NCBI GenBank assembly: GCA_977017575.1
Contig: CDRNVI010000002.1
Location: 744,001 to 808,000, forward strand
Length of the DNA: 64,000 nucleotides
Direction of reading: 5' to 3'
Source of the DNA: Paramoeba atlantica
Taxonomy: Eukaryota; Protista; Discosea
In this document: positions 9,642-21,028 of the stretch, piece after piece
How the letters are laid out: the number at the start of each line of letters is the position of its first letter
Position numbering within the stretch: position 1 is the first letter of the stretch
Notes under the pieces: generated by a model
The model's input: the letters and a program-made list of their open reading frames with translations, nothing else
Databases searched by the model: none
Told to the model about the DNA's origin: nothing
Position numbers and translations under genes: made by a program

Positions 9642-10298
9642 CTATGGATACCAAGATTCCTTTGCAGTTTTCCGACTAATGACTGGAGTATCACTGGAGA
9701 AGAGGTTCATATATAAATTATTGACGACGTGCAATGCACAGTCATTGTCACCAGGAGCTTGTTGCACGCAATCAAGATATGTGACCTGTAGTCCATGATA
9801 TCGTTCGTGCGATAATTTTAAGGTTTCCGCAAAGCGATTTAAGTTGTCCATTGCTGCACGAGGAGCGTGTTGTTTTAAACTGTCAAAAACTAGAAGGGTG
9901 TTGGAAGAGACCCGAACAAGTACGAAGTGAACTTCGTAATACAAGCATGCATACAACTCCGTCACAGGATCGAGTTCAGGGACAGTCCCAAACCCAAGAA
10001 GTGCCTGTGTTTGCCACACATTCCACAGTGCGACCTTTACACCCGTTTGTGTCGAATTGTATTTCTCGACTACTCGGTTGCATAAAATATCGAGAAGTCC
10101 ACATGGGATAAGAGAGCCCCGGCGGCGGATAGCATTCCATCGATCCCCTTTGTAGGAGTTGTCCAAGGATCCCCTTTGTTCAGTTGATGGCAGAGCATCT
10201 ACATCAATCTTATTTAATTTTGTTGATTGATCAGATAATTTTGTTGATTGATCATTTTTTTCGAAAAGTTTCTTACGTGAAGCCAACGCAGAGGCCAT
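9642..10298 (-). CDS. Ulp1-like (C48 SUMO/ubiquitin-like) cysteine peptidase, transposon cargo
   Basis: His (EVHFVLV), Asp (VFDSL) and oxyanion Gln plus Cys (QQAPGDNDCALHV) appear in C48 order and spacing. Confidence 0.75.
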   Translation of the reverse strand: MASALASRKKLFEKNDQSTKLSDQSTKLNKIDVDALPSTEQRGSLDNSYKGDRWNAIRRRGSLIPCGLLDILCNRVVEKYNSTQTGVKVALWNVWQTQALLGFGTVPELDPVTELYACLYYEVHFVLVRVSSNTLLVFDSLKQHAPRAAMDNLNRFAETLKLSHERYHGLQVTYLDCVQQAPGDNDCALHVVNNLYMNLFSSDTPVISRKTAKESWYP

Positions 10299-11134
10299 TA
10301 GAGAGTTACGTACACCTTCAAAGCGTTGTCGAGCGTCCGAGCAACATGACGTCGAGCGTCTCGCAGTATGCGGGACTTTTCATCTTCTGCATTGGACTTG
10401 AACAGTACCGTAGGAGGAAGGGGAAGAGCTTTTCTGTTGTGAACATCGTAAACACCGGAAAGAAAAACAGTTATACTTTCCTTGTCGTTGGTGGTTACGA
10501 CTTGCACGTTACGAAGCCCTATGAGAGCCAATGTTACTCCCGTATTTTCACCATCAACGGGAAGAGACGTTTCATCCCCAAATATCACATACGCGTATGA
10601 ACGGACTTGATTTTGTATGTACAGCTGCCGTGCCCAAGCTCGTATTCGCGAGCCCACGTCGGAAGGACCCATGTAGTGGACACGTCCAAATCTTCGGTTT
10701 CTCCACCCGAAAAGACGCTTGAAGCGCTTGTATATGCGTTCCTTCGTCTCATCGGCAAAGCCTTGAAGCTGTATTCCGTATGTTTCCATAACGGGAAAGA
10801 CAAATGCCTTCGTTACAGCATGTTTACCATTGATTTCTTGGAGCAATTTAAGGTGCACTTTCCTTAAAATTGCCTTCCGCTCTTTGTTAAAGCCTCTCTG
10901 GCGCTTTCTTCCCTTGAGACCACGATTAATACGTGATTGATAAAAAGAGACACCGTTGCTTTTAATACTTCGGACAGTTCTTAAACTGATCCGATACTTT
11001 TCGCTCAGCTTTTTTGTGTCCAATCCGCTCAGGCACACATTCAACTTCTCTTGCATAGTCAAACACACTCTAGAGGTCCTAGGTGTGCTCATCGGAAGAG
11101 AATCAAGTGTGTTGGGGGGAGGACGGCTGGCCAC
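10298..11134 (-). CDS. pogo/Tigger-like transposase, C-terminally truncated (HTH domains and first catalytic Asp only)
   Basis: LTMQEKL..LSEKYRISLRTVRSIK HTH; YVIFGDETSL; DKESITVFLSG; LPPTVLFK; stop precedes the expected second and third acidic residues; first ATG at 11092. Confidence 0.78.
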   Translation of the reverse strand: MASRPPPNTLDSLPMSTPRTSRVCLTMQEKLNVCLSGLDTKKLSEKYRISLRTVRSIKSNGVSFYQSRINRGLKGRKRQRGFNKERKAILRKVHLKLLQEINGKHAVTKAFVFPVMETYGIQLQGFADETKERIYKRFKRLFGWRNRRFGRVHYMGPSDVGSRIRAWARQLYIQNQVRSYAYVIFGDETSLPVDGENTGVTLALIGLRNVQVVTTNDKESITVFLSGVYDVHNRKALPLPPTVLFKSNAEDEKSRILRDARRHVARTLDNALKVYVTL

Positions 11135-11751
11135 CGGGGGAAGTTCAGCGGAGAAGTCGTCAATGGTCTGAAGATCGGAAACAGCGAGGGAGATCCTTTA
11201 AAACAGCTGTGCGAAGATCTCTAATTAATGTGAAGACTCATCTTTTTAGAAGCGAAATCAAAAGAAATAGTAGTAGCGGCCCATAAACGTAAAAAGATAT
11301 CTGCATTTATTTTTTTCAAAAAAGGCGCAATAATGCTTTACTTTGACCAAAATGGCAAAAAAAAAATTTCCAAAATCGTTTCTCCTATTGAATTTTGATA
11401 CTTTGGGACCTATACTAGCTTTCTCCACAGCTGTTTTCGCCAGATATCCTTTCTACAAACCGTGGTATGCCCGCGAAAAATGACCCATTTTTGACTAAAA
11501 AAGGTGAAAAAGAATTTTTCGGACCCCAAGGGGAATTTTTGTGTCGAAAGAATGGTATGGTTAGAGTCGCATTCTCTATCCAATACGTTTGGTAGGCTTT
11601 CATTCATGCCTACGAGTGATATCCCGCACGCAAATGTCGGATTTAGTGCTTTGGGAGCAAAAATACGCAAAAATCACCCCATTTTTACCCGAAAATTTTG
11701 GCTATAATATTTCTATTTTCTTCGGCTTTCCAGGCTCAATTTTCTTTTTTA

Positions 11752-11846
11752 GGCTCTTCGTTAAACGCGGTGGTAGTTTTCAACGCGAAGCGCGCAGCAT
11801 GAGTGACTTCTAAGTTGAAAACAACCACCGCGTTTAACGAAGAGCC
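11752..11846. mobile_element. 95-bp fold-back/MITE-like hairpin, copy 2 (inverted relative to copy 1)
   Basis: Reverse complement of 7965-8059 with 2 mismatches; TA on both sides. Confidence 0.85.
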
Positions 11847-12445
11847 TAAAAAAGTGTTATAAAAAAATAGCCTAAATAAAGTGTTACTAGATATAAATTT
11901 ATACAAATTTATACTGTATTTGACATAGTTCTTCAGTAAATGACAAAGAATCATCCGAGAATTACTTTCCTTAAACTTCTATTACTATTGACTGATTGCA
12001 GTGGGTTGCATAACTACCACTCTACCCTCAATTATTGAAAATTTATTTAAAAAAAGTGAACAAAAATAGTGAAAAATAGAGAAACACGGCAAAAAAGGAA
12101 AAAAGGTAATAGAGAACAAAATAATGAAGAAATGAAATGCGAAAGGGGTGCCGGTGGTCCAAAATTAAAGTGTGTAATCATTACTAATGGTGTCCTCAAA
12201 AAGCTGTTTTTTAATCGCAAAAGCAAGTTCGGCCCCGCTTTGGGGCGCCTGTTTTCTTCGACTCACAAATATGTAGGGAAGGTGATTTTACTAACTTTTC
12301 CCACAATTGACAAATAAGTAGGGGGTGTGCAGCGACAATTATGTAGGAGGGGATAACAAGTGGAAAAGTCTTAAAAAGTCACCAAAAAAGGTTTTTTCGA
12401 CAAAAAAATATAATTTAAACCTGCATTTATAGTGCCGGTTACCCA

Positions 12446-12464
12446 AATTTTCTTTATCCTTCAG
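12446..12464 (+). promoter_or_regulatory. Candidate spliced-leader trans-splice acceptor (pyrimidine tract + AG) directly before the polymerase ATG
   Basis: aattttctttatccttcag|ATG. Confidence 0.55.
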
Positions 12465-15400
12465 ATGACAAAACTAGGCAATGTTCCATCCGTATTCATC
12501 CCTGCAATAGGTACAGCACGGTCACAAGAAAGATGTGCGTGGAATGTTTTGAACGAATCTGGTATGGAAGCAACGATTGTTATTCATCGGCGTGACGAGG
12601 AACTTTTTCGTAGGCTTGTCAAAAAAATGAGAGGTATTCGCCTTTGGGTTGCCCCCCGACGTTGCCACTCTTTTTCTCAACTTTGCAATTACATCATCAC
12701 TGAACTAGGAAAATCTCGGAACTGGGTATGGATTATTGATCAGCACGTGGAAGATTTTTGTTTCCCGGCGACACCCTCCCATGAGTACCGTTCTCTTTCA
12801 CCGCTAATTGCCCTGCTGCACCGCACTGAATGGGAAGATTGTCAATCACTTTCCACAGAAACCCCGGAAAGATCAATATCAATTATAGCACTAGAACGAT
12901 GTTCTGTATCAACAGGAGTGGTGGTACCTTTTTGCGAAGATTGTCAACCTTCTGCTATATGCATTAAGACCTCCATGGGAACATGTTTCCGTAGCAATCT
13001 TCGTGCAACGGATGATGTGCTCCTAGATGCAATGCGTAAGGGTCACAGTGTATGCTTTATTGGAACCGTTGGTTGCGCGTTCAAAACGGGTGTAAACCGC
13101 TACACGGAGCACATCCTAAACTACTCCATGTTGCCGGCGCAGGTAGAAAAAGAAAGATCGCAGTTTGAAAAACGATGGAGTTTCTTGACTATAAAAGCGC
13201 GGTCGCCCCGGTACTCTGTTTCATGGGAAAACGTCGAAAAGCATTTTGGCGAGCATAATGAAGATGACTCAGCTGTTACTGAAAATTCTTTGGAGTCGAG
13301 GCGTAACACAGGTTCGTCACCACGTACAAGCCGCTTTGCAGATGTAGGAAATGTTTCCTCGAAGGCTGGATCGCTTGATGAGGCGGGGCAGCAGATAAGG
13401 GGCACCAGCACCGACACGCTTCCAAATAAATATTTTTTGAGATCCAAAGGAACAAATTCTCGCGAACCCTTCCTGTGGGATGTGGGTAAATCGTTTTTTA
13501 AAAGAAAGAGACAAACCCAGAAAAAATGTCCCTTAGATACTTGGGATGTAGGTGGTAAATTTCTTTATGAGAAGTCACTTCCTTCAACAAAAGTGTGTCT
13601 TAAGCCTATTTCAATTTCAAGAGGTATTGAGACGTCTGAAATGATGTCTAGTCAGCCTGAATCGAAATCTGCCCAGGGGAGAAGCGGTACAACAAAATGT
13701 CAAACGTCTTCCGCAAAATCGAAGGACAGTGTGTCTGAGTATCCGACAAATCTAACTTCTGAAAATTCATCCAGAGATCTACTTGAAGATATGCCTACGC
13801 GAATCTCAACTAGTATGCCACAAAAAGATATTGAAAAAGAGCTTCCTATGAAAATTGGGATCGAAGACGAGATTATCAATCCCTTTGATTTTAACAATAC
13901 TAATCATGATCTAAGTTTTCTATTAGAGCAACTAAGAACGCATTCTACGGAATACAATGAGAGCTGTAGCCCCGACATCGACAAGGTGCAAAGTCATTGG
14001 GTTGGCATCATAGGAGTCGAATACGCCTCCCTAATATGTTTTTGGGGAGGTAACATTTACGTTGTTGACATGGCGTCACCCACAAACGTAGATCAGCTAA
14101 TCGAAATATTTTCTTTGTCAGTTGATAAAATAGTTGTAGGAGCTCAACCGATTTACCGCAGTCTACTTCGACACTTGCGTGGTACGCCGCTTTACGACAC
14201 GTTTTACCCTTCTATGATTCAAGACCTTTCAATTTCATCTTTTCTTCTTGGGCACCGCTCGCTAACTGTAGATTCACTCCCCGAACACGCACGTAATCTA
14301 GGATGTGATGTAGTTGAAGTTCGGTTTCCTCAAATTTTACGTGACATCTCATTCCAACACAAAAAATTGTTACAAAATGAGAATTTGTTCTCTGTGTGTA
14401 GTACCGCGAACGAACTCGAGTTTGTTCTAGCCCGAATGCGCTGCGATGGACTATTGTTAGACTTACAAGAAATGATTCGAGTCAAATCCGAATGGCTCTC
14501 CCAGCTTGAATCCCCTTCCATTACAAAGGCCAACGAACGAAGTCTCATATCTCGTATCGGTAACTTAGAGAGCATTTTACACGAGACCGTTTCAAAATCA
14601 CTCACGGAATCCGATTGTGCGCTACGAGAAATTCACCCTTGTTATCGTCAGACCACGCGAACGGGTCGCATCATGTGTTCACGGCCCAATATTCAAACCT
14701 TTCCAAAAGAAACCCTTGTGAACGGGGCGAGCAGTTCGGGATTACGAACAGCTCTACGTCCACCGCTTGGCATGGTATGGGTCTCTCTGGATTACAGCCA
14801 TTTAGAACTCCGTCTCCTGGCACACTTTGCAAACGATGACGTTCTCAAGGAAATGTTTATCCACGATGTCGATGTTCACGCACACTTCGCCTCCTTGTTG
14901 GAACAGAAACCAACGGAGGCGATTACCCATGACGAGAGAGAGCGGGCCAAACTTCTGATTTATAGTTATCTTCATGGAGCAAAAGTTGAACGGCTTGCTG
15001 CATCCACGGGTCTCGGCTGGGAGCGTGTCTCGGCATTTCTTTCTCGGTGTCAGGAGACTCACCCAAGGCTTACGGCTTTTCGGGCATCCGTGAAACAAGA
15101 ATGTGAGGTAAATGGTGTAGTTCGTACGCTATGTGGCACAAGGGGTAACTTTCCTCCTATTACGACAGGGGATGAGCCCGACCCGTGGCTCTATACCCAG
15201 GCGGTGAGTTTTATGATCCAAGGATCTGCTGCGGATATTATGAAAAAGCTGCTTTGTACTCTTTTTCGCATGTCCCAAGCCCACACGCCGTGTCCATTTT
15301 ATGTAGCATTCCAATTGTTTGACGAAGTAGTCTTAGGGGTGGATAAGAGACTCTTGTCCTACGCGCTGCCTCGTATTTTAAAAGAAGCGGAAAGTGTAGT

Positions 15401-15542
15401 GGCTCTTTCTGTGCCTCTTCGTTGTACCGTTCGAGTGGGTAAGAATTTTGGGGCAATGCAACGTTTGGGTCGAACTCGACTACTTAACGTCGATAACACC
15501 AACGCTGGAAACAATCTTTTTACAAGAAATACATGGAGATAG
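12465..15542 (+). CDS. Family A (Pol theta/nu-like) DNA polymerase with an N-terminal GREB1/JGT-like GT-A domain
   Basis: TTRTGRIMCSRPNIQTFPK, motif A SLDYSHLELRLLAHF, motif B RERAKLLIYSYLHG, IQGSAADIMK and motif C FQLFDEV; first ATG at 12465. Confidence 0.88.
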   Translation: MTKLGNVPSVFIPAIGTARSQERCAWNVLNESGMEATIVIHRRDEELFRRLVKKMRGIRLWVAPRRCHSFSQLCNYIITELGKSRNWVWIIDQHVEDFCFPATPSHEYRSLSPLIALLHRTEWEDCQSLSTETPERSISIIALERCSVSTGVVVPFCEDCQPSAICIKTSMGTCFRSNLRATDDVLLDAMRKGHSVCFIGTVGCAFKTGVNRYTEHILNYSMLPAQVEKERSQFEKRWSFLTIKARSPRYSVSWENVEKHFGEHNEDDSAVTENSLESRRNTGSSPRTSRFADVGNVSSKAGSLDEAGQQIRGTSTDTLPNKYFLRSKGTNSREPFLWDVGKSFFKRKRQTQKKCPLDTWDVGGKFLYEKSLPSTKVCLKPISISRGIETSEMMSSQPESKSAQGRSGTTKCQTSSAKSKDSVSEYPTNLTSENSSRDLLEDMPTRISTSMPQKDIEKELPMKIGIEDEIINPFDFNNTNHDLSFLLEQLRTHSTEYNESCSPDIDKVQSHWVGIIGVEYASLICFWGGNIYVVDMASPTNVDQLIEIFSLSVDKIVVGAQPIYRSLLRHLRGTPLYDTFYPSMIQDLSISSFLLGHRSLTVDSLPEHARNLGCDVVEVRFPQILRDISFQHKKLLQNENLFSVCSTANELEFVLARMRCDGLLLDLQEMIRVKSEWLSQLESPSITKANERSLISRIGNLESILHETVSKSLTESDCALREIHPCYRQTTRTGRIMCSRPNIQTFPKETLVNGASSSGLRTALRPPLGMVWVSLDYSHLELRLLAHFANDDVLKEMFIHDVDVHAHFASLLEQKPTEAITHDERERAKLLIYSYLHGAKVERLAASTGLGWERVSAFLSRCQETHPRLTAFRASVKQECEVNGVVRTLCGTRGNFPPITTGDEPDPWLYTQAVSFMIQGSAADIMKKLLCTLFRMSQAHTPCPFYVAFQLFDEVVLGVDKRLLSYALPRILKEAESVVALSVPLRCTVRVGKNFGAMQRLGRTRLLNVDNTNAGNNLFTRNTWR

Positions 15543-15824: not shown

Positions 15825-17738
15825 ATGTGTGAGCTTTCCTCCGTTATTACAAGATGGTGCGACCAGCAGGAATTACTTATTGACTCGGAAAAAAATGCAT
15901 CCGAATTAAAAGGGGCACGTTCACATGCAATACGCGGTCATATCGAGCAAGTTATTGCCGTACTCGACGAAGCATATCATTTTCATATTCAACTTGCTAA
16001 GAAGCAAGAAAAAAATCCTTACCGTCCGCGTGAGTCAGTTAGATTACAGCGACATGATCCAACAGACAAGAAGCCTATCTCGTCAACTTCATGCACTAGG
16101 CAAGACAAAAGAAAATTAAATGGAGTCGTCATACAAGTGGGAGCAGGAAATATCGTGCTTGCCGTGCAGGATTTCGATTTTACATCTGAATGGGGTATGG
16201 ATGTGGAAGTAACTCTAACGTCATGTCCTGATGAACTTACCTTTCGACGACTTCGACGTGTATTGGGATCCGAAGAGCCCAGCATACGCGTCTTGCAACC
16301 AATGTTTCCTACACATGCTGATATTGTTTTTGGGAAGTCTGATAAAATTCCAGAGCCTGACGCAGATAAACAAAATAGTATAGAGCTTTTCAACTCCTCA
16401 TTGAATGAAGCACAGCAGCGTGCTGTACTAGGTGCTCTACATTCACCAAACATTCACATTATCCACGGTCCTCCAGGAACCGGAAAGACCACTACAATTT
16501 GTGAAATTGTTCGCCAGATGACCATTCGTCAAAATTTTCGTATTCTGGTTTGCGCACCATCAAATGTAGCCGTGGATAACATTCTGCTTAGCTTGAGCAA
16601 CACAAGGCTTTCCAGCAAAGGCATCCGTCCGATTCGATTAGGTCACGTCGGTCGAGTACATCCCAATATGGCGCAGTATACCTTAAATGAGTTACTCCGC
16701 TCGCACGAGCAAAACGAGGTTCTTTGCGATATACAACAAGATATTAACAAACTTCTCAAAGAGCGATGCACCGGTAGGTCTAAATACAGTGAAATCAAGA
16801 AATTACGTAATGAACTGCGAATGAGAGAACGAAAAGCGACAGAGCAACTGATCATGTCGGCAAACATGATTACATGCACGTGTAGCTCTGCGGCCCACTA
16901 TCTTGTACAACAAGACTGTTTTGATGCCGTTCTAATTGATGAGGCATCACAGTCGCTTTTTGTTGAAAGTTTCATCCCTTTGCTTCGAGCCACCCGATGG
17001 ATTCTTGTTGGGGATCCGTGTCAGTTACCTCCTACGGTGCTAAGCGGCTCTAAAGAGCTCGAAAAAACACTTATGGGTCATTTATTGTCTAAGGAAAAAG
17101 AAACTCCGAATATTTTATCCTTACTCGATACGCAATATCGTATGCATGAAGAGATTTGTGGGTGGAGTAATCAGGAGTTCTATGAAGAAAAACTAAAAAC
17201 GGATGTATCCTCAGCGAGCGCTCTTCTGTGTGATTTGCCAAATGTTGAATCCACCTACGAGACCTGCAGCGCTATTATGTTTGCAGACACCAGGGAAATG
17301 GGTCTTGGAGAGAGTTCTTCGTCCTCAGGAAGCAAAGAAAGTTTTGGGGAATCTATGCTGGTGGAACAGCACGTGCGAAGTTTGAAGTCTGCTGGAATTG
17401 CTCTCAGTTCGATCGGAGTTATCACACCGTACTCCGCTCAGGCAAAGCTGATTTCTGAAAGCTTACGTGCTGAGATCGATCCTGACTCCAACGTTGAAGT
17501 TAGTACAGTGGATGCATTCCAGGGAAGAGAAAAACTAGCGGTCATTCTATCTTTAGTGCGTTCCAACGTGGAAGGAGAGGTTGGATTTCTATCAGATTCT
17601 CGTCGGATGAATGTAGCCTTGACTAGGGCACAGAGACATCTCTTGATAATAGGAGACTCTGACACCATGAACCGGGATTCCGGGCTGCGAAAACTTTGTT
17701 CTTATTTAGAAGAAATAGCTTCGTATGTCCAGATTTAG
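15825..17738 (+). CDS. IGHMBP2: SF1B (Upf1-like) helicase, IGHMBP2/SMUBP-2/Hcs1 type
   Basis: LNEAQQRAV, IHGPPGTGKTTT, CAPSNVAVDN, IDEASQ, GDPCQLPPTV, QYRMH, ITPYSAQ, TVDAFQGREK and RRMNVALTRA motifs. Confidence 0.9.
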   Translation: MCELSSVITRWCDQQELLIDSEKNASELKGARSHAIRGHIEQVIAVLDEAYHFHIQLAKKQEKNPYRPRESVRLQRHDPTDKKPISSTSCTRQDKRKLNGVVIQVGAGNIVLAVQDFDFTSEWGMDVEVTLTSCPDELTFRRLRRVLGSEEPSIRVLQPMFPTHADIVFGKSDKIPEPDADKQNSIELFNSSLNEAQQRAVLGALHSPNIHIIHGPPGTGKTTTICEIVRQMTIRQNFRILVCAPSNVAVDNILLSLSNTRLSSKGIRPIRLGHVGRVHPNMAQYTLNELLRSHEQNEVLCDIQQDINKLLKERCTGRSKYSEIKKLRNELRMRERKATEQLIMSANMITCTCSSAAHYLVQQDCFDAVLIDEASQSLFVESFIPLLRATRWILVGDPCQLPPTVLSGSKELEKTLMGHLLSKEKETPNILSLLDTQYRMHEEICGWSNQEFYEEKLKTDVSSASALLCDLPNVESTYETCSAIMFADTREMGLGESSSSSGSKESFGESMLVEQHVRSLKSAGIALSSIGVITPYSAQAKLISESLRAEIDPDSNVEVSTVDAFQGREKLAVILSLVRSNVEGEVGFLSDSRRMNVALTRAQRHLLIIGDSDTMNRDSGLRKLCSYLEEIASYVQI

Positions 17739-18628: not shown

Positions 18629-21028
18629 TTGGAGCAAGAACCAACTAGAATAGCATTTACAGGCTTTGAAAAAGAAGTAATTAAGAAGTTTGAAGTCTCC
18701 ACAAATTCTTGTGAATGGCTCACGGTACAGAAAGATATTTCACAACGAACCTCGGTTCTAATCTGTGCTTGCGTAGCAACTCATAAATATGTTTACGCAG
18801 TGAAACATAAGATACCATGCGTTCAGAGGACTTGGCTAACCGAGTCCGTTCGAACGGGATACCCCTTGCATTGTATCGAAAAGTTCATGGTTCCTCCACT
18901 ACATGGTCTGCGAATATCCGTAACAGGAGGATCTCAAAGACAGAGGGAAGAAGTAGCGACGAAATGCGTGCAGGCAGGTGGGCAATTTTCAGCCAACTTG
19001 GATAAATATGTCCATTGTCTTATCATACTTCAAAAGAGCGAAGCGGGACGTATTCAACAAGGGCCAAAAATAGATTTTGCAAAAAAGTATAAAATTCGTA
19101 CGGCGAATTTAGAGTGGCTGATACAAATTATTGCGCAGGGTTACTGGAACGACACCGTGTGCGATCAAGATTCCGCGCATGCTTCTCACTCTGTTCGTAT
19201 GCTTTCGAATTCCCCTGAAAACTCCACTTTAAAAGTACAATCGCCCACCACGAAGGAATGTTACTTGAACGACTTCTTTGTATGGTTTCTAGGCGAACTT
19301 CCTTTACATTTTTCTGGCACAAAGGAAGCGACTGGATTTGTGCACGATAAGGTTCTATCTTCACATACAAATATCATATGCCTATCTGGGGTGAAACTGA
19401 ACGATCTGGATGTGTGTAATGCATTTCAACGTGTAGACCCAGAGTTTCGTCGCTTCGCTATACAACTGTGGTTAGAGGGAAAAGCGACCCTTCTACACTG
19501 GTCGTACTTTTTGCTATGTGCTTCATTAAAATCGAAGCAAGATTTAGCCATCTATACAATCCCTCCATGCCTGCACTATTTTGAAAGAGTCATAGGATTG
19601 CATTCTTCAATTTCTATTAAAGAAAAACTGGAATTGGCGATTATCGTTGAGCGATTGAACGGTTGTGTGCTGTTTATGGATTTCATGGAACCTGGTCCAG
19701 ACGATGGTGTCAATGAAAACATAGAAAATATATGCAGAATATCATCTCATCTTATTGTGCGTCAGGAGGACGACTTGACCTCGGGTAGGCGTATTAAAAG
19801 CCTACCAAAAAATCATCCCACGCCCATTTTTGCTTATGCCAGCTGGCTTCGAGATTGTGAAATCCAAAACAAATGGATGGAACCGCGCAAGGAACATTTA
19901 TACCCAACGGAGAATTTTCAGAGGCCACTGCGACCGATGCTAGAATCAGAAGCTCATATGCGACAGCCCTCAGTGACATCTACAAACAACTCCTTTACAC
20001 CCACGTCCCAAGACCCTTACAAGCACGATCTCAAAAGAGAACGATCTGACACCTCCTCAACTCAAAACTTCCACAACGAAACAACTCAACCGGATCGATC
20101 CGACGAAATCCTTGCCCTGTTTTCGCAACGTTGCAAAGCCCAACCTCCACAACCTCAACCCTCTCCCCCCCCTCCCACCTCCACAAACCCTCCCCTGCGC
20201 TACTCTTGCCTCCATCGTACCTTTGTACCCCGCCACCTCGACCCCACCCACGACCCCACCTCCCCCCTCTACGAAAGCCAGCGCGTCATCTACAACCACA
20301 ACCCCTCCCCCTCTCCCCCTCCCCCCTCCCCTCCCCCCCCCTACCGCTTCCTGCTCGGCCACAAGGACCCGCGGCAGCGCTCGGCCCTGATCTCCCACAT
20401 CCGCGCGCTCCCGGGGGCCACCGTCGTGGGGTCCGTGTCGTCCTGCACGCACTACCTCCCCCCCCGCGCCTCCAGGTCCGAGACCTTCCTCTCCTGCATC
20501 GCCTCCGGGAGGTTCATCCTGCGCCCCGCCTTCCTCACGGAGAGCGTGCGGCACGGGGCGTGGCAGGACCCGGGGGGGTATGAGTGGGGGGTGGGGGGGG
20601 AGGGGGAGGAGGGGGGGGTGGGGAGTATGACCACACAGTCACTGCTGCTTCAGGCGTGTCGAACGTGGCGACTCCGGGGTGGGGGGGCGTTTGGGGGGTG
20701 GAGAGTGGTGTTGGTGATGAGGGAGGTGGGGAGGAGGAGGAGTTTTGGGAATGTGTTGCGACGGGGGGGTGCGTCGTGGGTGGGGGAGGTGAGTCCAGAG
20801 GAGGTGGAGAGGGGGGAGAGGTTGTGTGAGTTTGAGAATCCGAGCTATGTTATCTATGATGATGGTTTGGATGAGGAGGAACAGCGAGCGCTGTATGGTA
20901 AACTCCGGGGTAGGACGAAGAATTCGTCGCACGTGCGCTTGGAGTGTATTATTTTCGTATTGACCTATCCGGATGAAGTGATTCCAGGGGCCTTGCGCGT
21001 GAACGGTCGTAGTCATAAATTCAGGTGA
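18629..21028 (+). CDS. Multi-BRCT TopBP1/Rad4/Dpb11-like protein
   Basis: Tandem BRCT pairs (GLRISVTGG..GGQFSANLDKYVHCLI..WLIQ; C-terminal CTHYL..SRSETFLSCIASGRFILRPAFL..FGGWRVVL); start uncertain (TTG at 18629, first ATG at 18887). Confidence 0.85.
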   Translation: MEQEPTRIAFTGFEKEVIKKFEVSTNSCEWLTVQKDISQRTSVLICACVATHKYVYAVKHKIPCVQRTWLTESVRTGYPLHCIEKFMVPPLHGLRISVTGGSQRQREEVATKCVQAGGQFSANLDKYVHCLIILQKSEAGRIQQGPKIDFAKKYKIRTANLEWLIQIIAQGYWNDTVCDQDSAHASHSVRMLSNSPENSTLKVQSPTTKECYLNDFFVWFLGELPLHFSGTKEATGFVHDKVLSSHTNIICLSGVKLNDLDVCNAFQRVDPEFRRFAIQLWLEGKATLLHWSYFLLCASLKSKQDLAIYTIPPCLHYFERVIGLHSSISIKEKLELAIIVERLNGCVLFMDFMEPGPDDGVNENIENICRISSHLIVRQEDDLTSGRRIKSLPKNHPTPIFAYASWLRDCEIQNKWMEPRKEHLYPTENFQRPLRPMLESEAHMRQPSVTSTNNSFTPTSQDPYKHDLKRERSDTSSTQNFHNETTQPDRSDEILALFSQRCKAQPPQPQPSPPPPTSTNPPLRYSCLHRTFVPRHLDPTHDPTSPLYESQRVIYNHNPSPSPPPPSPPPPYRFLLGHKDPRQRSALISHIRALPGATVVGSVSSCTHYLPPRASRSETFLSCIASGRFILRPAFLTESVRHGAWQDPGGYEWGVGGEGEEGGVGSMTTQSLLLQACRTWRLRGGGAFGGWRVVLVMREVGRRRSFGNVLRRGGASWVGEVSPEEVERGERLCEFENPSYVIYDDGLDEEEQRALYGKLRGRTKNSSHVRLECIIFVLTYPDEVIPGALRVNGRSHKFR

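What the first reader, a model, noticed from the sequence alone, without database searches (positions are those of the whole stretch)
12465..15542. Base-J-glucosyltransferase/GREB1-like GT-A domain fused to a family-A DNA polymerase
Seen: the first ~250 aa before the polymerase read VFIPAIGT..WNVL / TIVIHRRDEELFRRL / LWVAP..FSQLCNYIITEL / WVWIIDQHV / SIIAL / VPF / FRSNLRATDDVLL..RKGHSVCF. From memory of the family, this follows in order the GREB1 C-terminal/TET-JBP-associated glycosyltransferase blocks: IFIPxxGR, VLVV.E.E...Y, LVLP..G.GAA...I, I..DD, FxxxxxxxDDVDF..R..G. Established: a member of this family (JGT) glucosylates hmU to base J in kinetoplastids, and a Pol theta-like PolIE is telomere-associated in T. 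brucei. Here the GR Arg and the DD motif are altered (GT, DQH) while the second acidic patch (DDV) survives. Inference: the protein either couples DNA synthesis to base modification or, more likely, uses a catalytically dead GT domain as a reader of hmU, base J or UDP-sugar to target the polymerase. I do not know of this fusion being characterised.
Basis: partly seen in the sequence, partly recalled or inferred. Interest (0 to 1): 0.85.

Follow-up and report, generated by a model that had tools for sequence, protein, structure and literature searches.

The report
Dead J-glucosyltransferase domain fused to polymerase
One uninterrupted gene of a euglenozoan protist joins a degenerate copy of the enzyme domain that puts glucose on DNA (the base-J glucosyltransferase family) to a very divergent family-A DNA polymerase. 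No other sequence searched has this combination, and it may link DNA synthesis to chemically modified DNA.

Summary
Window 12465-15542 (+) is one 1025-codon reading frame.

- **N-terminal domain.** Residues about 5-255 are a true but very distant homologue of the TAGT/JGT DNA glycosyltransferases. An exhaustive phmmer of 1.84 billion proteins gave one real hit, a JGT-family protein (E 6e-4). hhalign gave 96% probability over 220 columns. The family profile scores 35 bits, against at most 3 bits for 1001 shuffles.
- **Below library thresholds.** Pfam TAGT and the phage TAGT profile do not detect the domain.
- **Active site.** All three published active-site motifs (R...DDD...EDY/F) are broken: T17, D-Q-H 92-94 and A-T-D 181-183. 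The hydrophobic core is kept, so this is most likely a pseudo-enzyme.
- **Polymerase.** Residues 694-996 match Pfam DNA_pol_A (E 7e-51). Both catalytic aspartates are kept. The thumb is about half length, two near-invariant residues are changed, and the tree branch is extremely long.
- **Uniqueness.** None of its 120 nearest polymerase relatives carries the domain, including a Leishmania Pol-theta/nu-like protein. No orthologue was found.
- **Not shown.** Transcription and any reader function remain untested.
- **Verdict.** The scan also noted the same fusion on another piece of this genome (s1-386313).

The parts
12465..15542 (+). Single CDS of 1025 codons plus TAG stop: JGT-like domain, disordered linker, exonuclease-like region, family-A polymerase
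   Evidence: ORF list. Each of the four segments has 0 stops in frame 0 and 8-18 in the other forward frames, and a positive codon-usage score (+0.24 to +0.31 per codon) only in frame 0. Contigs of three independent runs show no insertions or deletions inside it.
12448..12464 (+). Pyrimidine-rich tract ending in AG directly before the ATG; possible trans-splice acceptor
   Evidence: Read from the sequence. The genome is reported to use a 39-nt spliced leader (unchecked note). Not confirmed by RNA.
12477..13187 (+). JGT/TAGT-like GT-A domain (aa 5-241 by hhalign; similarity probably runs on to about aa 255)
   Evidence: AF2 model with pLDDT 80-92 for aa 10-90. Foldseek top AFDB cluster is a 642-aa unnamed entry (Q4CRM6), the length of the T. 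cruzi JGT-family protein P0132, at E 8.8e-10 and TM 0.63; TAGT-named and GT2 proteins follow. PDB hits are GT-A enzymes.
12492..12515 (+). First strand and nucleotide loop, VFIPAIGT (aa 10-17); the family has (I/V)(F/Y)IPSK.R
   Evidence: S14A, K15I and R17T against 10 true members.
12732..12749 (+). Degenerate metal/donor motif IIDQHV (aa 90-95); the family has (M/I)DDDI
   Evidence: D92 is kept, D93Q and D94H are changed. DDD is named as an active-site motif in bioRxiv 10.1101/2023.12.21.572611.
13002..13016 (+). Degenerate second acidic motif RATDD (aa 180-184); the family has (R/K)xDxD, REDYD in JGTs
   Evidence: E181A and D182T are changed, D184 is kept. EDY/F is named as an active-site motif.
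13290..13874 (+). Ser/Lys/Thr-rich linker (aa 276-470, pI 9.3) with a basic NLS-like patch KRKRQTQKK (aa 346-354, nt 13500-13526) flanked by two WDVG..F motifs
   Evidence: Composition, pI and motif positions. No family match.
13875..14384 (+). Exonuclease-like N-terminal region of a Klenow-type large fragment (aa 471-640); no recognisable exonuclease carboxylate motifs
   Evidence: The model of aa 466-1025 aligns over about 490 columns with the Bst and Taq large fragments. pLDDT there is under 50 and Pfam finds no exonuclease family.
14544..15452 (+). Family-A polymerase palm and fingers (Pfam match aa 694-996)
   Evidence: E 7.3e-51; model pLDDT 85-93.
14787..14813 (+). Motif A, LDYSHLELR (aa 775-783), with catalytic Asp776 kept
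   Evidence: Alignment A3; positions.
14937..14978 (+). Motif B, RERAKLLIYSYLHG (aa 825-838): R and K kept, Tyr at the Phe position as in Pol theta/nu-like proteins, and the otherwise invariant last Tyr replaced by His837
   Evidence: Alignment A3.
15312..15332 (+). Motif C, QLFDEVV (aa 950-956): Asp953 and Glu954 kept, the His of HDE replaced by Phe952
   Evidence: Alignment A3.

Best explanation
Shown: a single-copy gene in a plus-strand gene array of a euglenozoan genome encodes one polypeptide. It joins a complete but degenerate JGT/TAGT-type GT-A domain (aa ~5-255), a ~200-aa basic disordered linker with an NLS-like patch, and a Klenow-like family-A polymerase (aa ~471-1005).

Inferred: the GT-like domain no longer transfers sugar. 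The three active-site motifs of the family (R...DDD...EDY/F) and most other polar residues conserved from phages to kinetoplastids are replaced, while the hydrophobic core positions are kept. It is therefore most likely a folded pseudo-enzyme module.

Most likely mechanism (inference): the module keeps the ancestral habit of docking on DNA that carries 5-hydroxymethyluracil or base J, or on partners of the J machinery. It thereby brings a low-processivity, probably low-fidelity polymerase to such DNA in the nucleus for gap filling, lesion bypass or end synthesis. The polymerase features behind that description are the kept catalytic aspartates, the half-length thumb, Y-to-H in motif B and H-to-F in motif C.
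For: - Homology of the N-domain.
- Loss of conserved polar residues with retention of the core: of 42 positions at least 90% conserved in 10 true members (4 phage, 6 eukaryotic), 15 are kept. Most are hydrophobic or aromatic (I12, W87, W89, F98, L143, L187, Y220, W238) and the kept polar ones include D92, E144 and D184. 27 are lost, including S14, R17, E41, G69, R74, D93, D94, D182, Q188 and R198.
- The active-site motifs are named in the literature.
- One CDS. Contiguity and absence of indels in three runs, at single-copy depth.
- Some purifying selection: 12 synonymous and 17 non-synonymous among the listed variants, with 23% synonymous sites, giving pN/pS of about 0.4. In the GT-like part the counts are 4 and 2.
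- Polymerase core intact.
- No mitochondrial-type presequence: the first strand of the fold starts at aa 10. A basic patch lies in the linker.
- Context: unchecked scan notes report many TET/JBP dioxygenase genes in this genome. In Leishmania, JGT co-purifies with a J-binding complex (PMC7055916). Base J moderately blocks replication in human cells (PMC4111573).
Against: - No binding, activity or localisation data exist.
- No RNA evidence: the only RNA-labelled run held nothing.
- No orthologue in 1.84e9 representative proteins or in the metagenome scan, so conservation of the fusion across species cannot be shown.
- The polymerase branch is extremely long, 5.97 changes per column. Seven listed variants in aa 899-967 are all non-synonymous. 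Both could mean relaxed constraint.
- D-Q-H is a possible D-x-H metal site.
- The structural match to JGT is partly circular, because the model's alignment consisted of JGT-family sequences.
- The presence of base J in this organism was not tested.
Confidence: 0.5

Rival explanations
1. The GT-like domain is still an enzyme with a remodelled active site (D-x-H metal site, other donor or acceptor). The protein would then glycosylate DNA, or a protein, in step with DNA synthesis.
For: D92 and H94 form a D-x-H pattern, which some GT-A enzymes use in place of DxD (my knowledge of polypeptide GalNAc-transferases). One residue of each motif survives: N75, D92, R180 and D184. The TAGT relative GREB1 acts on a protein substrate (PMC7968844).
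Against: Ten positions that are 100% conserved in all true members compared are replaced, including the Arg after strand 1, Glu41, Arg74, two of the three Asp and the first Asp of the second acidic motif. The NSYNN segment is missing. Neither Pfam TAGT nor phrog_842 detects the domain.
Confidence: 0.12
2. The fusion is a young or decaying lineage-specific accident. The N-domain is a relic with no role of its own, kept open only because it lies upstream of the polymerase. Alternatively the whole gene is drifting towards loss.
For: There is no orthologue anywhere. The branch is extremely long. The run of non-synonymous variants in aa 899-967 fits relaxed constraint. Near-invariant polymerase residues are changed and the thumb is shortened. 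No expression was shown.
Against: The GT-fold core residues are selectively retained while the polar ones are lost, which points to long selection for folding. Codon usage is gene-like in all four segments. The frame is intact in three samples that differ by about 1%. Overall pN/pS is about 0.4. Both catalytic aspartates are kept.
Confidence: 0.2
3. Two products are made. An internal trans-splice site in the linker yields a separate polymerase mRNA starting at one of the in-frame Met codons (aa 393 to 462), and the GT-like part is made alone or not at all.
For: Euglenozoan arrays are cut by trans-splicing. The linker contains five in-frame Met codons, at aa 393, 394, 443, 451 and 462. No RNA data contradict this.
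Against: There is no stop codon between the parts over 195 linker codons, while the other frames have 8-18 stops, and the codon usage is coding-like. No pyrimidine tract plus AG like the one at 12448-12464 is evident before the internal Met codons printed.
Confidence: 0.08
4. The N-terminal resemblance is chance, and the region is an unrelated alpha/beta domain.
For: Pfam and PHROGs give no hit. Identity to true members is only 17-22%. The word-based search was blank.
Against: Database-wide E of 6.4e-4 to a true member in 1.84e9 proteins. hhalign E 1.5e-9 over 220 columns in the right order. 35 bits against at most 3 bits for shuffles. Independent language-model features agree.
Confidence: 0.03

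Closest known systems
Base-J glucosyltransferase (JGT) of kinetoplastids and its short relatives in uncultured eukaryotes (Pfam PF20691 TAGT)
   Same: The order of all sequence blocks is the same from the first strand to the C-terminal R..V.W segment. The predicted GT-A fold is shared. The nearest sequence in 1.84e9 proteins is a member of this clade.
   Different: The active-site motifs R...DDD...EDY/F are broken, the NSYNN segment is missing, and the domain falls below Pfam's threshold. It is fused to a polymerase, whereas true members listed carry only PF20691.
Phage TET/5mYOX-associated GT-A DNA glycosyltransferases (phrog_842; bioRxiv 10.1101/2023.12.21.572611)
   Same: Same family and fold. 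They share core positions with the window protein.
   Different: The phage enzymes keep all catalytic motifs, are stand-alone proteins of about 255 aa next to dioxygenase genes, and are not detected by the window domain.
GREB1 C-terminal glycosyltransferase domain
   Same: Another TAGT-family domain embedded in a large multidomain nuclear or cytoplasmic protein, next to an inactive nucleic-acid enzyme domain (PMC7968844).
   Different: GREB1's GT domain is reported to be active (O-GlcNAc on ER-alpha) and its partner is a dead helicase. Here the GT looks dead and the partner polymerase looks potentially live. No direct comparison with GREB1 was made here.
Pol theta/nu-like family-A polymerases of protists (T. 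brucei PolIE, Leishmania 'DNA polymerase A family protein' P0016) and metazoan Pol nu
   Same: Family-A palm and fingers without a helicase domain. Tyr at the motif-B Phe position. It falls outside the bacterial Pol I clade, which has 98/97 support (PMC7515707).
   Different: Only about 30% identity, confined to about 290 aa. The N-terminal parts are unrelated. The thumb is about half as long. Motif B has His for Tyr and motif C has Phe for His. Orthology to PolIE is not shown.

Membership tests
TAGT / JGT glycosyltransferase family (PF20691) | Match to the family's curated Pfam profile at or above the gathering score (27.5 bits) | tested here: not met
   No Pfam family at E<=1 for aa 1-282. 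The phage TAGT profile phrog_842 is also silent, while the control P0122 scores E 2.8e-22.
TAGT / JGT glycosyltransferase family (PF20691) | Statistically supported homology to bona fide members over the whole domain | tested here: met
   phmmer E 6.4e-4 in 1.84e9 proteins. hhalign 96.3%, E 1.5e-9, 220 columns. 35.4 bits against at most 3.1 for shuffles. 33.8 bits leave-one-out.
TAGT / JGT glycosyltransferase family (PF20691) | GT-A (Rossmann-like, single-domain) fold | tested here: inconclusive
   The model (pTM 0.68; aa 10-90 pLDDT 80-92) matches a JGT-sized cluster, TAGT-named clusters and GT2 enzymes. The model's alignment was made of JGT-family sequences, so the match is partly circular. 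Alignment-free language-model features agree.
TAGT / JGT glycosyltransferase family (PF20691) | Active-site motifs R ... DDD ... EDY/F (bioRxiv 10.1101/2023.12.21.572611) | tested here: not met
   T17 for R, D-Q-H for DDD, A-T-D for EDY.
TAGT / JGT glycosyltransferase family (PF20691) | Transfer of a sugar to hydroxymethylated bases in DNA | not testable with these tools
   Needs an enzyme assay.
Family-A DNA polymerases (PF00476) | Match to the Pfam profile above the gathering score | tested here: met
   173.7 bits against 34.3, E 7.3e-51, aa 694-996, but only profile positions 78-380.
Family-A DNA polymerases (PF00476) | Catalytic carboxylates of motifs A and C | tested here: met
   D776, D953 and E954 align with the invariant columns.
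Family-A DNA polymerases (PF00476) | Motif B R..K...(F/Y)..YG and the His of HDE | tested here: inconclusive
   R, K and the first aromatic residue are kept. The final Tyr is His837 and the His of HDE is Phe952. The effect on activity is unknown.
Family-A DNA polymerases (PF00476) | Full-length thumb subdomain | tested here: not met
   About 45 residues are missing between the ..STSE.VL.. segment and the IH..F.Q strand, relative to six relatives. pLDDT there is under 50.
Kinetoplastid PolIE orthologue group | Closest relative is PolIE, with similarity beyond the catalytic core | tested here: not met
   The Leishmania relative scores 108 bits, no better than bacterial Pol I at 129 bits. Similarity is limited to aa 723-999. 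The grouping in the tree is a join of two long branches.

The most novel reading that the evidence does not exclude
The protein is a modification-guided DNA polymerase. A catalytically dead descendant of the base-J glucosyltransferase acts as a built-in reader of hmU or base J (or as a dock for the J machinery), so that repair or bypass synthesis is directed to hypermodified DNA. This would be a first example of a eukaryotic polymerase physically coupled to a hypermodified-base recognition module, in a genome that earlier scan notes describe as full of TET/JBP-carrying transposons.
Probability: 0.3. Interest if true: 0.8.

Novelty: new variant of a known kind. Interest (0 to 1): 0.6.

Why it matters
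How cells replicate, repair and maintain DNA that carries base J or its precursor hmU is poorly understood, and the J glucosyltransferase has so far been seen only as a stand-alone enzyme. A JGT-derived domain that has lost its catalytic residues yet kept its fold, welded to a DNA polymerase, gives a concrete and testable candidate for a link between DNA synthesis and base hypermodification. It would also be a pseudo-enzyme member of the TAGT family, in an architecture that none of the true members or polymerase relatives recovered here shows. If the domain proves to bind hmU- or J-DNA, it could also serve as a new affinity reagent for these bases.

Tried and rejected
- Pfam on aa 1-282 gave no family at E<=1. 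PHROGs gave only a stray 15.8-bit hit.
- The word-based search with aa 1-300 was blank.
- The top hit of the exhaustive search, P0121, is a six-fold HYR-repeat protein matched by summed short stretches. It was rejected as an artefact.
- A profile built from the four trypanosome JGTs alone, which carry long insertions, barely scores: 4.9 bits. The signal comes from the short JGT-like proteins.
- Orthologue searches found nothing: the polymerase part had nothing above 33% identity, the metagenome contig scan found no relative, and the exact-sequence look-up found no record.
- PolIE-type relatives and 120 polymerase hits were scanned with the JGT profile. The best score was 2.8 bits.
- RNA evidence: the only RNA-labelled run (X4) held nothing. 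Runs X1-X3 are of unknown kind. The ends of the X2 contigs at 12447, 15541 and 15696 looked at first like mRNA ends. There is no AG before 12447, and variant sites lie just beyond 15541, so they are better read as contig breaks at polymorphisms.
- Transposon-cargo idea: no inverted repeats bracket the gene and depth is single-copy.
- Rfam found nothing in the window.
No paper retrieved by the keyword searches describes a TAGT-polymerase fusion.
Full report
**The sequence**

The window holds an open frame at 12432..15542 on the plus strand. Its first ATG is at 12465, giving 1025 codons and a TAG stop. A pyrimidine tract ending in AG lies directly before the ATG.

The window looks like a euglenozoan directional gene array. 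26 of its 28 ORFs of 250 aa or more are on the plus strand and read without introns. They include eEFSec, a BRCT protein, a TOG/XMAP215 protein and V-ATPase subunit H. Earlier notes of this scan describe a 39-nt spliced leader in the same genome (not checked here).

**One gene or two**

I split the frame into four segments: the GT-like part (aa 1-275), the linker (276-470), the exonuclease-like part (471-640) and the polymerase (641-1025). Each segment has no stop in frame 0 and 8-18 stops in the other forward frames. Each also has a positive codon-usage log-odds, trained on nine neighbouring genes, only in frame 0: +0.24 to +0.31 per codon.

Contigs of three public runs of the same organism cover the gene. 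They break only at a heterozygous bubble (13605-13797). Depth equals that of the flanks, and no insertion or deletion lies inside the CDS. Indels occur only in the intergenic stretches. So the joint is neither an assembly artefact nor a repeat.

None of the listed single-base variants makes a stop. 12 are synonymous and 17 are not, where 23% of possible changes are synonymous, so pN/pS is roughly 0.4. The counts are 4 and 2 in the GT-like part. Seven variants in aa 899-967 are all non-synonymous. The listing was truncated, so these numbers are rough.

The only run labelled as RNA held nothing, so transcription as one mRNA is not shown.

**The C-terminal half**

Pfam DNA_pol_A matches aa 694-996 at E 7.3e-51, but only from profile position 78. 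Solved Pol I, Pol nu and Pol theta chains match at E 1e-29 to 1e-19.

An alignment with six relatives shows the following:
- The TGR...PN.Q motif is kept.
- Motif A keeps its catalytic Asp (D776).
- Motif B keeps Arg and Lys. It has Tyr at the Phe position, as in the Pol theta/nu-like eukaryotic sequences, but His837 in place of the Tyr that is invariant in the others.
- The QGSAAD motif is kept.
- Motif C keeps Asp953 and Glu954 but has Phe952 for the His of HDE.
- About 45 residues of the thumb are missing.

An AlphaFold model of aa 466-1025 is confident for palm and fingers (pLDDT 85-93). It is poor for the thumb and for the exonuclease-like region. It aligns over about 490 columns with Klenow-type large fragments.

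The nearest proteins in 5.8e9 clusters are only 28-33% identical over the core. They are mostly bacterial Pol I, along with a Leishmania 'DNA polymerase A family protein', a protist sequence and Pol nu.

In a maximum-likelihood tree the window protein lies outside the bacterial clade, which has 98/97 support. Its terminal branch is 5.97 changes per column, against a median of 0.6. Its join with the Leishmania sequence is a meeting of two long branches.

From general knowledge of Klenow-fragment mutants, changes at the motif-B Tyr and the motif-C His lower fidelity and DNA binding rather than abolish catalysis. I therefore read the enzyme as possibly active, distributive and error-prone. This is inference.

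**The N-terminal domain**

Pfam and PHROGs do not see it, and the word-based search was blank. Three other lines of evidence do support homology.

- **Exhaustive search.** phmmer of aa 1-290 against 1.84e9 representatives returned two proteins. One is a repeat artefact. The other is P0122, at E 6.4e-4 for aa 4-112. P0122 is a Pfam TAGT protein at E 2e-17. Its relatives include the TAGT-family proteins of Trypanosoma brucei, T. cruzi, T. vivax and Strigomonas. To my knowledge this is the family to which the experimentally identified base-J glucosyltransferase belongs.
- **Profile comparison.** hhalign of the domain against an 18-member alignment of that clade gives 96.3% probability and E 1.5e-9, aa 5-241 against profile 16-254. 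The HMM of the clade scores the domain at 35.4 bits, against at most 3.1 bits for 1000 shuffles and the reversed sequence. With P0122 left out it still scores 33.8 bits.
- **Language-model features.** Independently of any alignment, these place 87 of the 100 nearest Atlas clusters in PF20691.

An AlphaFold model built on the clade alignment has pTM 0.68, with pLDDT 80-92 for the first 90 residues.
- In AFDB clusters, its best match is an unnamed 642-aa entry (Q4CRM6) of the same length as the T. cruzi JGT-family protein P0132 (E 8.8e-10, TM 0.63). TAGT-named proteins and then GT2 enzymes follow.
- In the PDB, it matches GT-A enzymes such as WrtF, TarP and chondroitin polymerase.

Because the model's alignment consisted of JGT-family sequences, this structural match is corroboration and not independent proof.

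**Is it an enzyme**

I fetched four distinct phage TAGT genes and aligned them with six eukaryotic members and the window domain. Among the ten true members, 42 positions are at least 90% conserved.

- The window domain keeps 15 of them. Most are hydrophobic or aromatic: I12, W87, W89, F98, L143, L187, Y220 and W238. It also keeps D92, E144, D184 and G209.
- It has replaced 27. These include S14A, K15I, R17T, E41H, G69S, R74C, D93Q, D94H, D182T, Q188D and R198F. The last few columns of that alignment are less reliable.

A recent study of phage DNA glycosyltransferases names R...DDD...EDY/F as the conserved active-site motifs shared with T. cruzi JGT (bioRxiv 10.1101/2023.12.21.572611). All three are broken here.

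Loss of the polar catalytic set with retention of the core is the usual signature of a pseudo-enzyme. One caveat remains: D-Q-H is formally a D-x-H motif, which some GT-A enzymes use to hold the metal. Residual nucleotide-sugar binding is therefore possible.

**Is the architecture known**

None of the 120 best polymerase relatives scores above 2.8 bits with the JGT profile. The Leishmania relative has only DNA_pol_A, and its N-terminal part is unrelated. The paper on T. brucei PolIE describes a polymerase domain only (PMC7515707). True JGT-family proteins carry only PF20691 in the precomputed lists. A metagenome scan with peptides of the window protein found no relative. No paper retrieved by the keyword searches describes such a fusion. 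The founding TAGT paper could not be fetched by the ids I tried.

The scan's own index holds a first-reader note of the same fusion, with the same 3078-letter length, on another piece of this genome (s1-386313). I could not tell whether it is the other allele or a paralogue.

**Mechanism**

The protein starts directly with the first strand of the GT fold, so it has no organellar presequence. Its basic, Ser/Lys/Thr-rich linker carries the patch KRKRQTQKK between two WDVG..F motifs. That fits a nuclear protein.

My best reading, at about 50%, is that the dead JGT module serves as a docking or recognition domain that directs a distributive A-family polymerase. The likeliest target is hmU- or J-bearing DNA, because that is what the ancestral fold engaged. 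A second possibility is partners of the J machinery, since Leishmania JGT co-purifies with the JBP3-PNUTS-Wdr82-PP1 complex (PMC7055916). Base J moderately hinders replication in human cells (PMC4111573), so a dedicated polymerase is at least plausible.

Rivals:
- a still-active, remodelled transferase (about 12%);
- a lineage-specific relic in a fast-drifting gene (about 20%);
- two products through an internal trans-splice site (about 8%);
- chance resemblance (about 3%).

**Verdict**

The homology and the 'dead GT' inference are supported. The finding is a new domain architecture built from two known families, seen so far in one genome only and without expression data. It is interesting but not yet compelling.

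Noticed in passing
window 11744-11854: A 111-bp element made of two 41-nt arms that are 98% complementary. Summed contig depth there is about 1.2e5 and 1.1e5 in two runs, against about 43 for the neighbouring single-copy gene. This is a very high-copy hairpin or MITE-like repeat.
   Followed up: partly
window 15825-17738 (+) and 18629-21028 (+): An SF1 helicase (AAA_11 E 2e-57, AAA_12 E 2e-56) starts 283 nt after the polymerase stop, and a BRCT-repeat protein follows it. That makes three DNA-metabolism genes in a row on one strand. Adjacency in such arrays may mean nothing.
   Followed up: no
window 13476-13563 (aa 338-366 of the fusion): Two short motifs, WDVGKSF and WDVGGKF, flank a basic patch KRKRQTQKK in the disordered linker. 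The patch is a possible nuclear localisation signal, or the whole could be a small repeated binding motif.
   Followed up: no
window 13605-13797: A heterozygous bubble: two contig versions differing at 7 positions, present at about equal depth in two runs. The three runs also differ from the window by about 1% across the gene.
   Followed up: partly
window 10298-11134 (-): A 278-aa ORF on the opposite strand just upstream of the gene, with only a weak helix-turn-helix hit (GerE, E 0.02).
   Followed up: no
L001 590-2026 (Logan contig DRR438482_508250): The nearest true JGT-like protein (P0122, 478 aa) lies in a same-strand array next to a CMAS/sterol-methyltransferase-like gene on a 4-kb contig of an unidentified sample. 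It may come from another euglenozoan.
   Followed up: no
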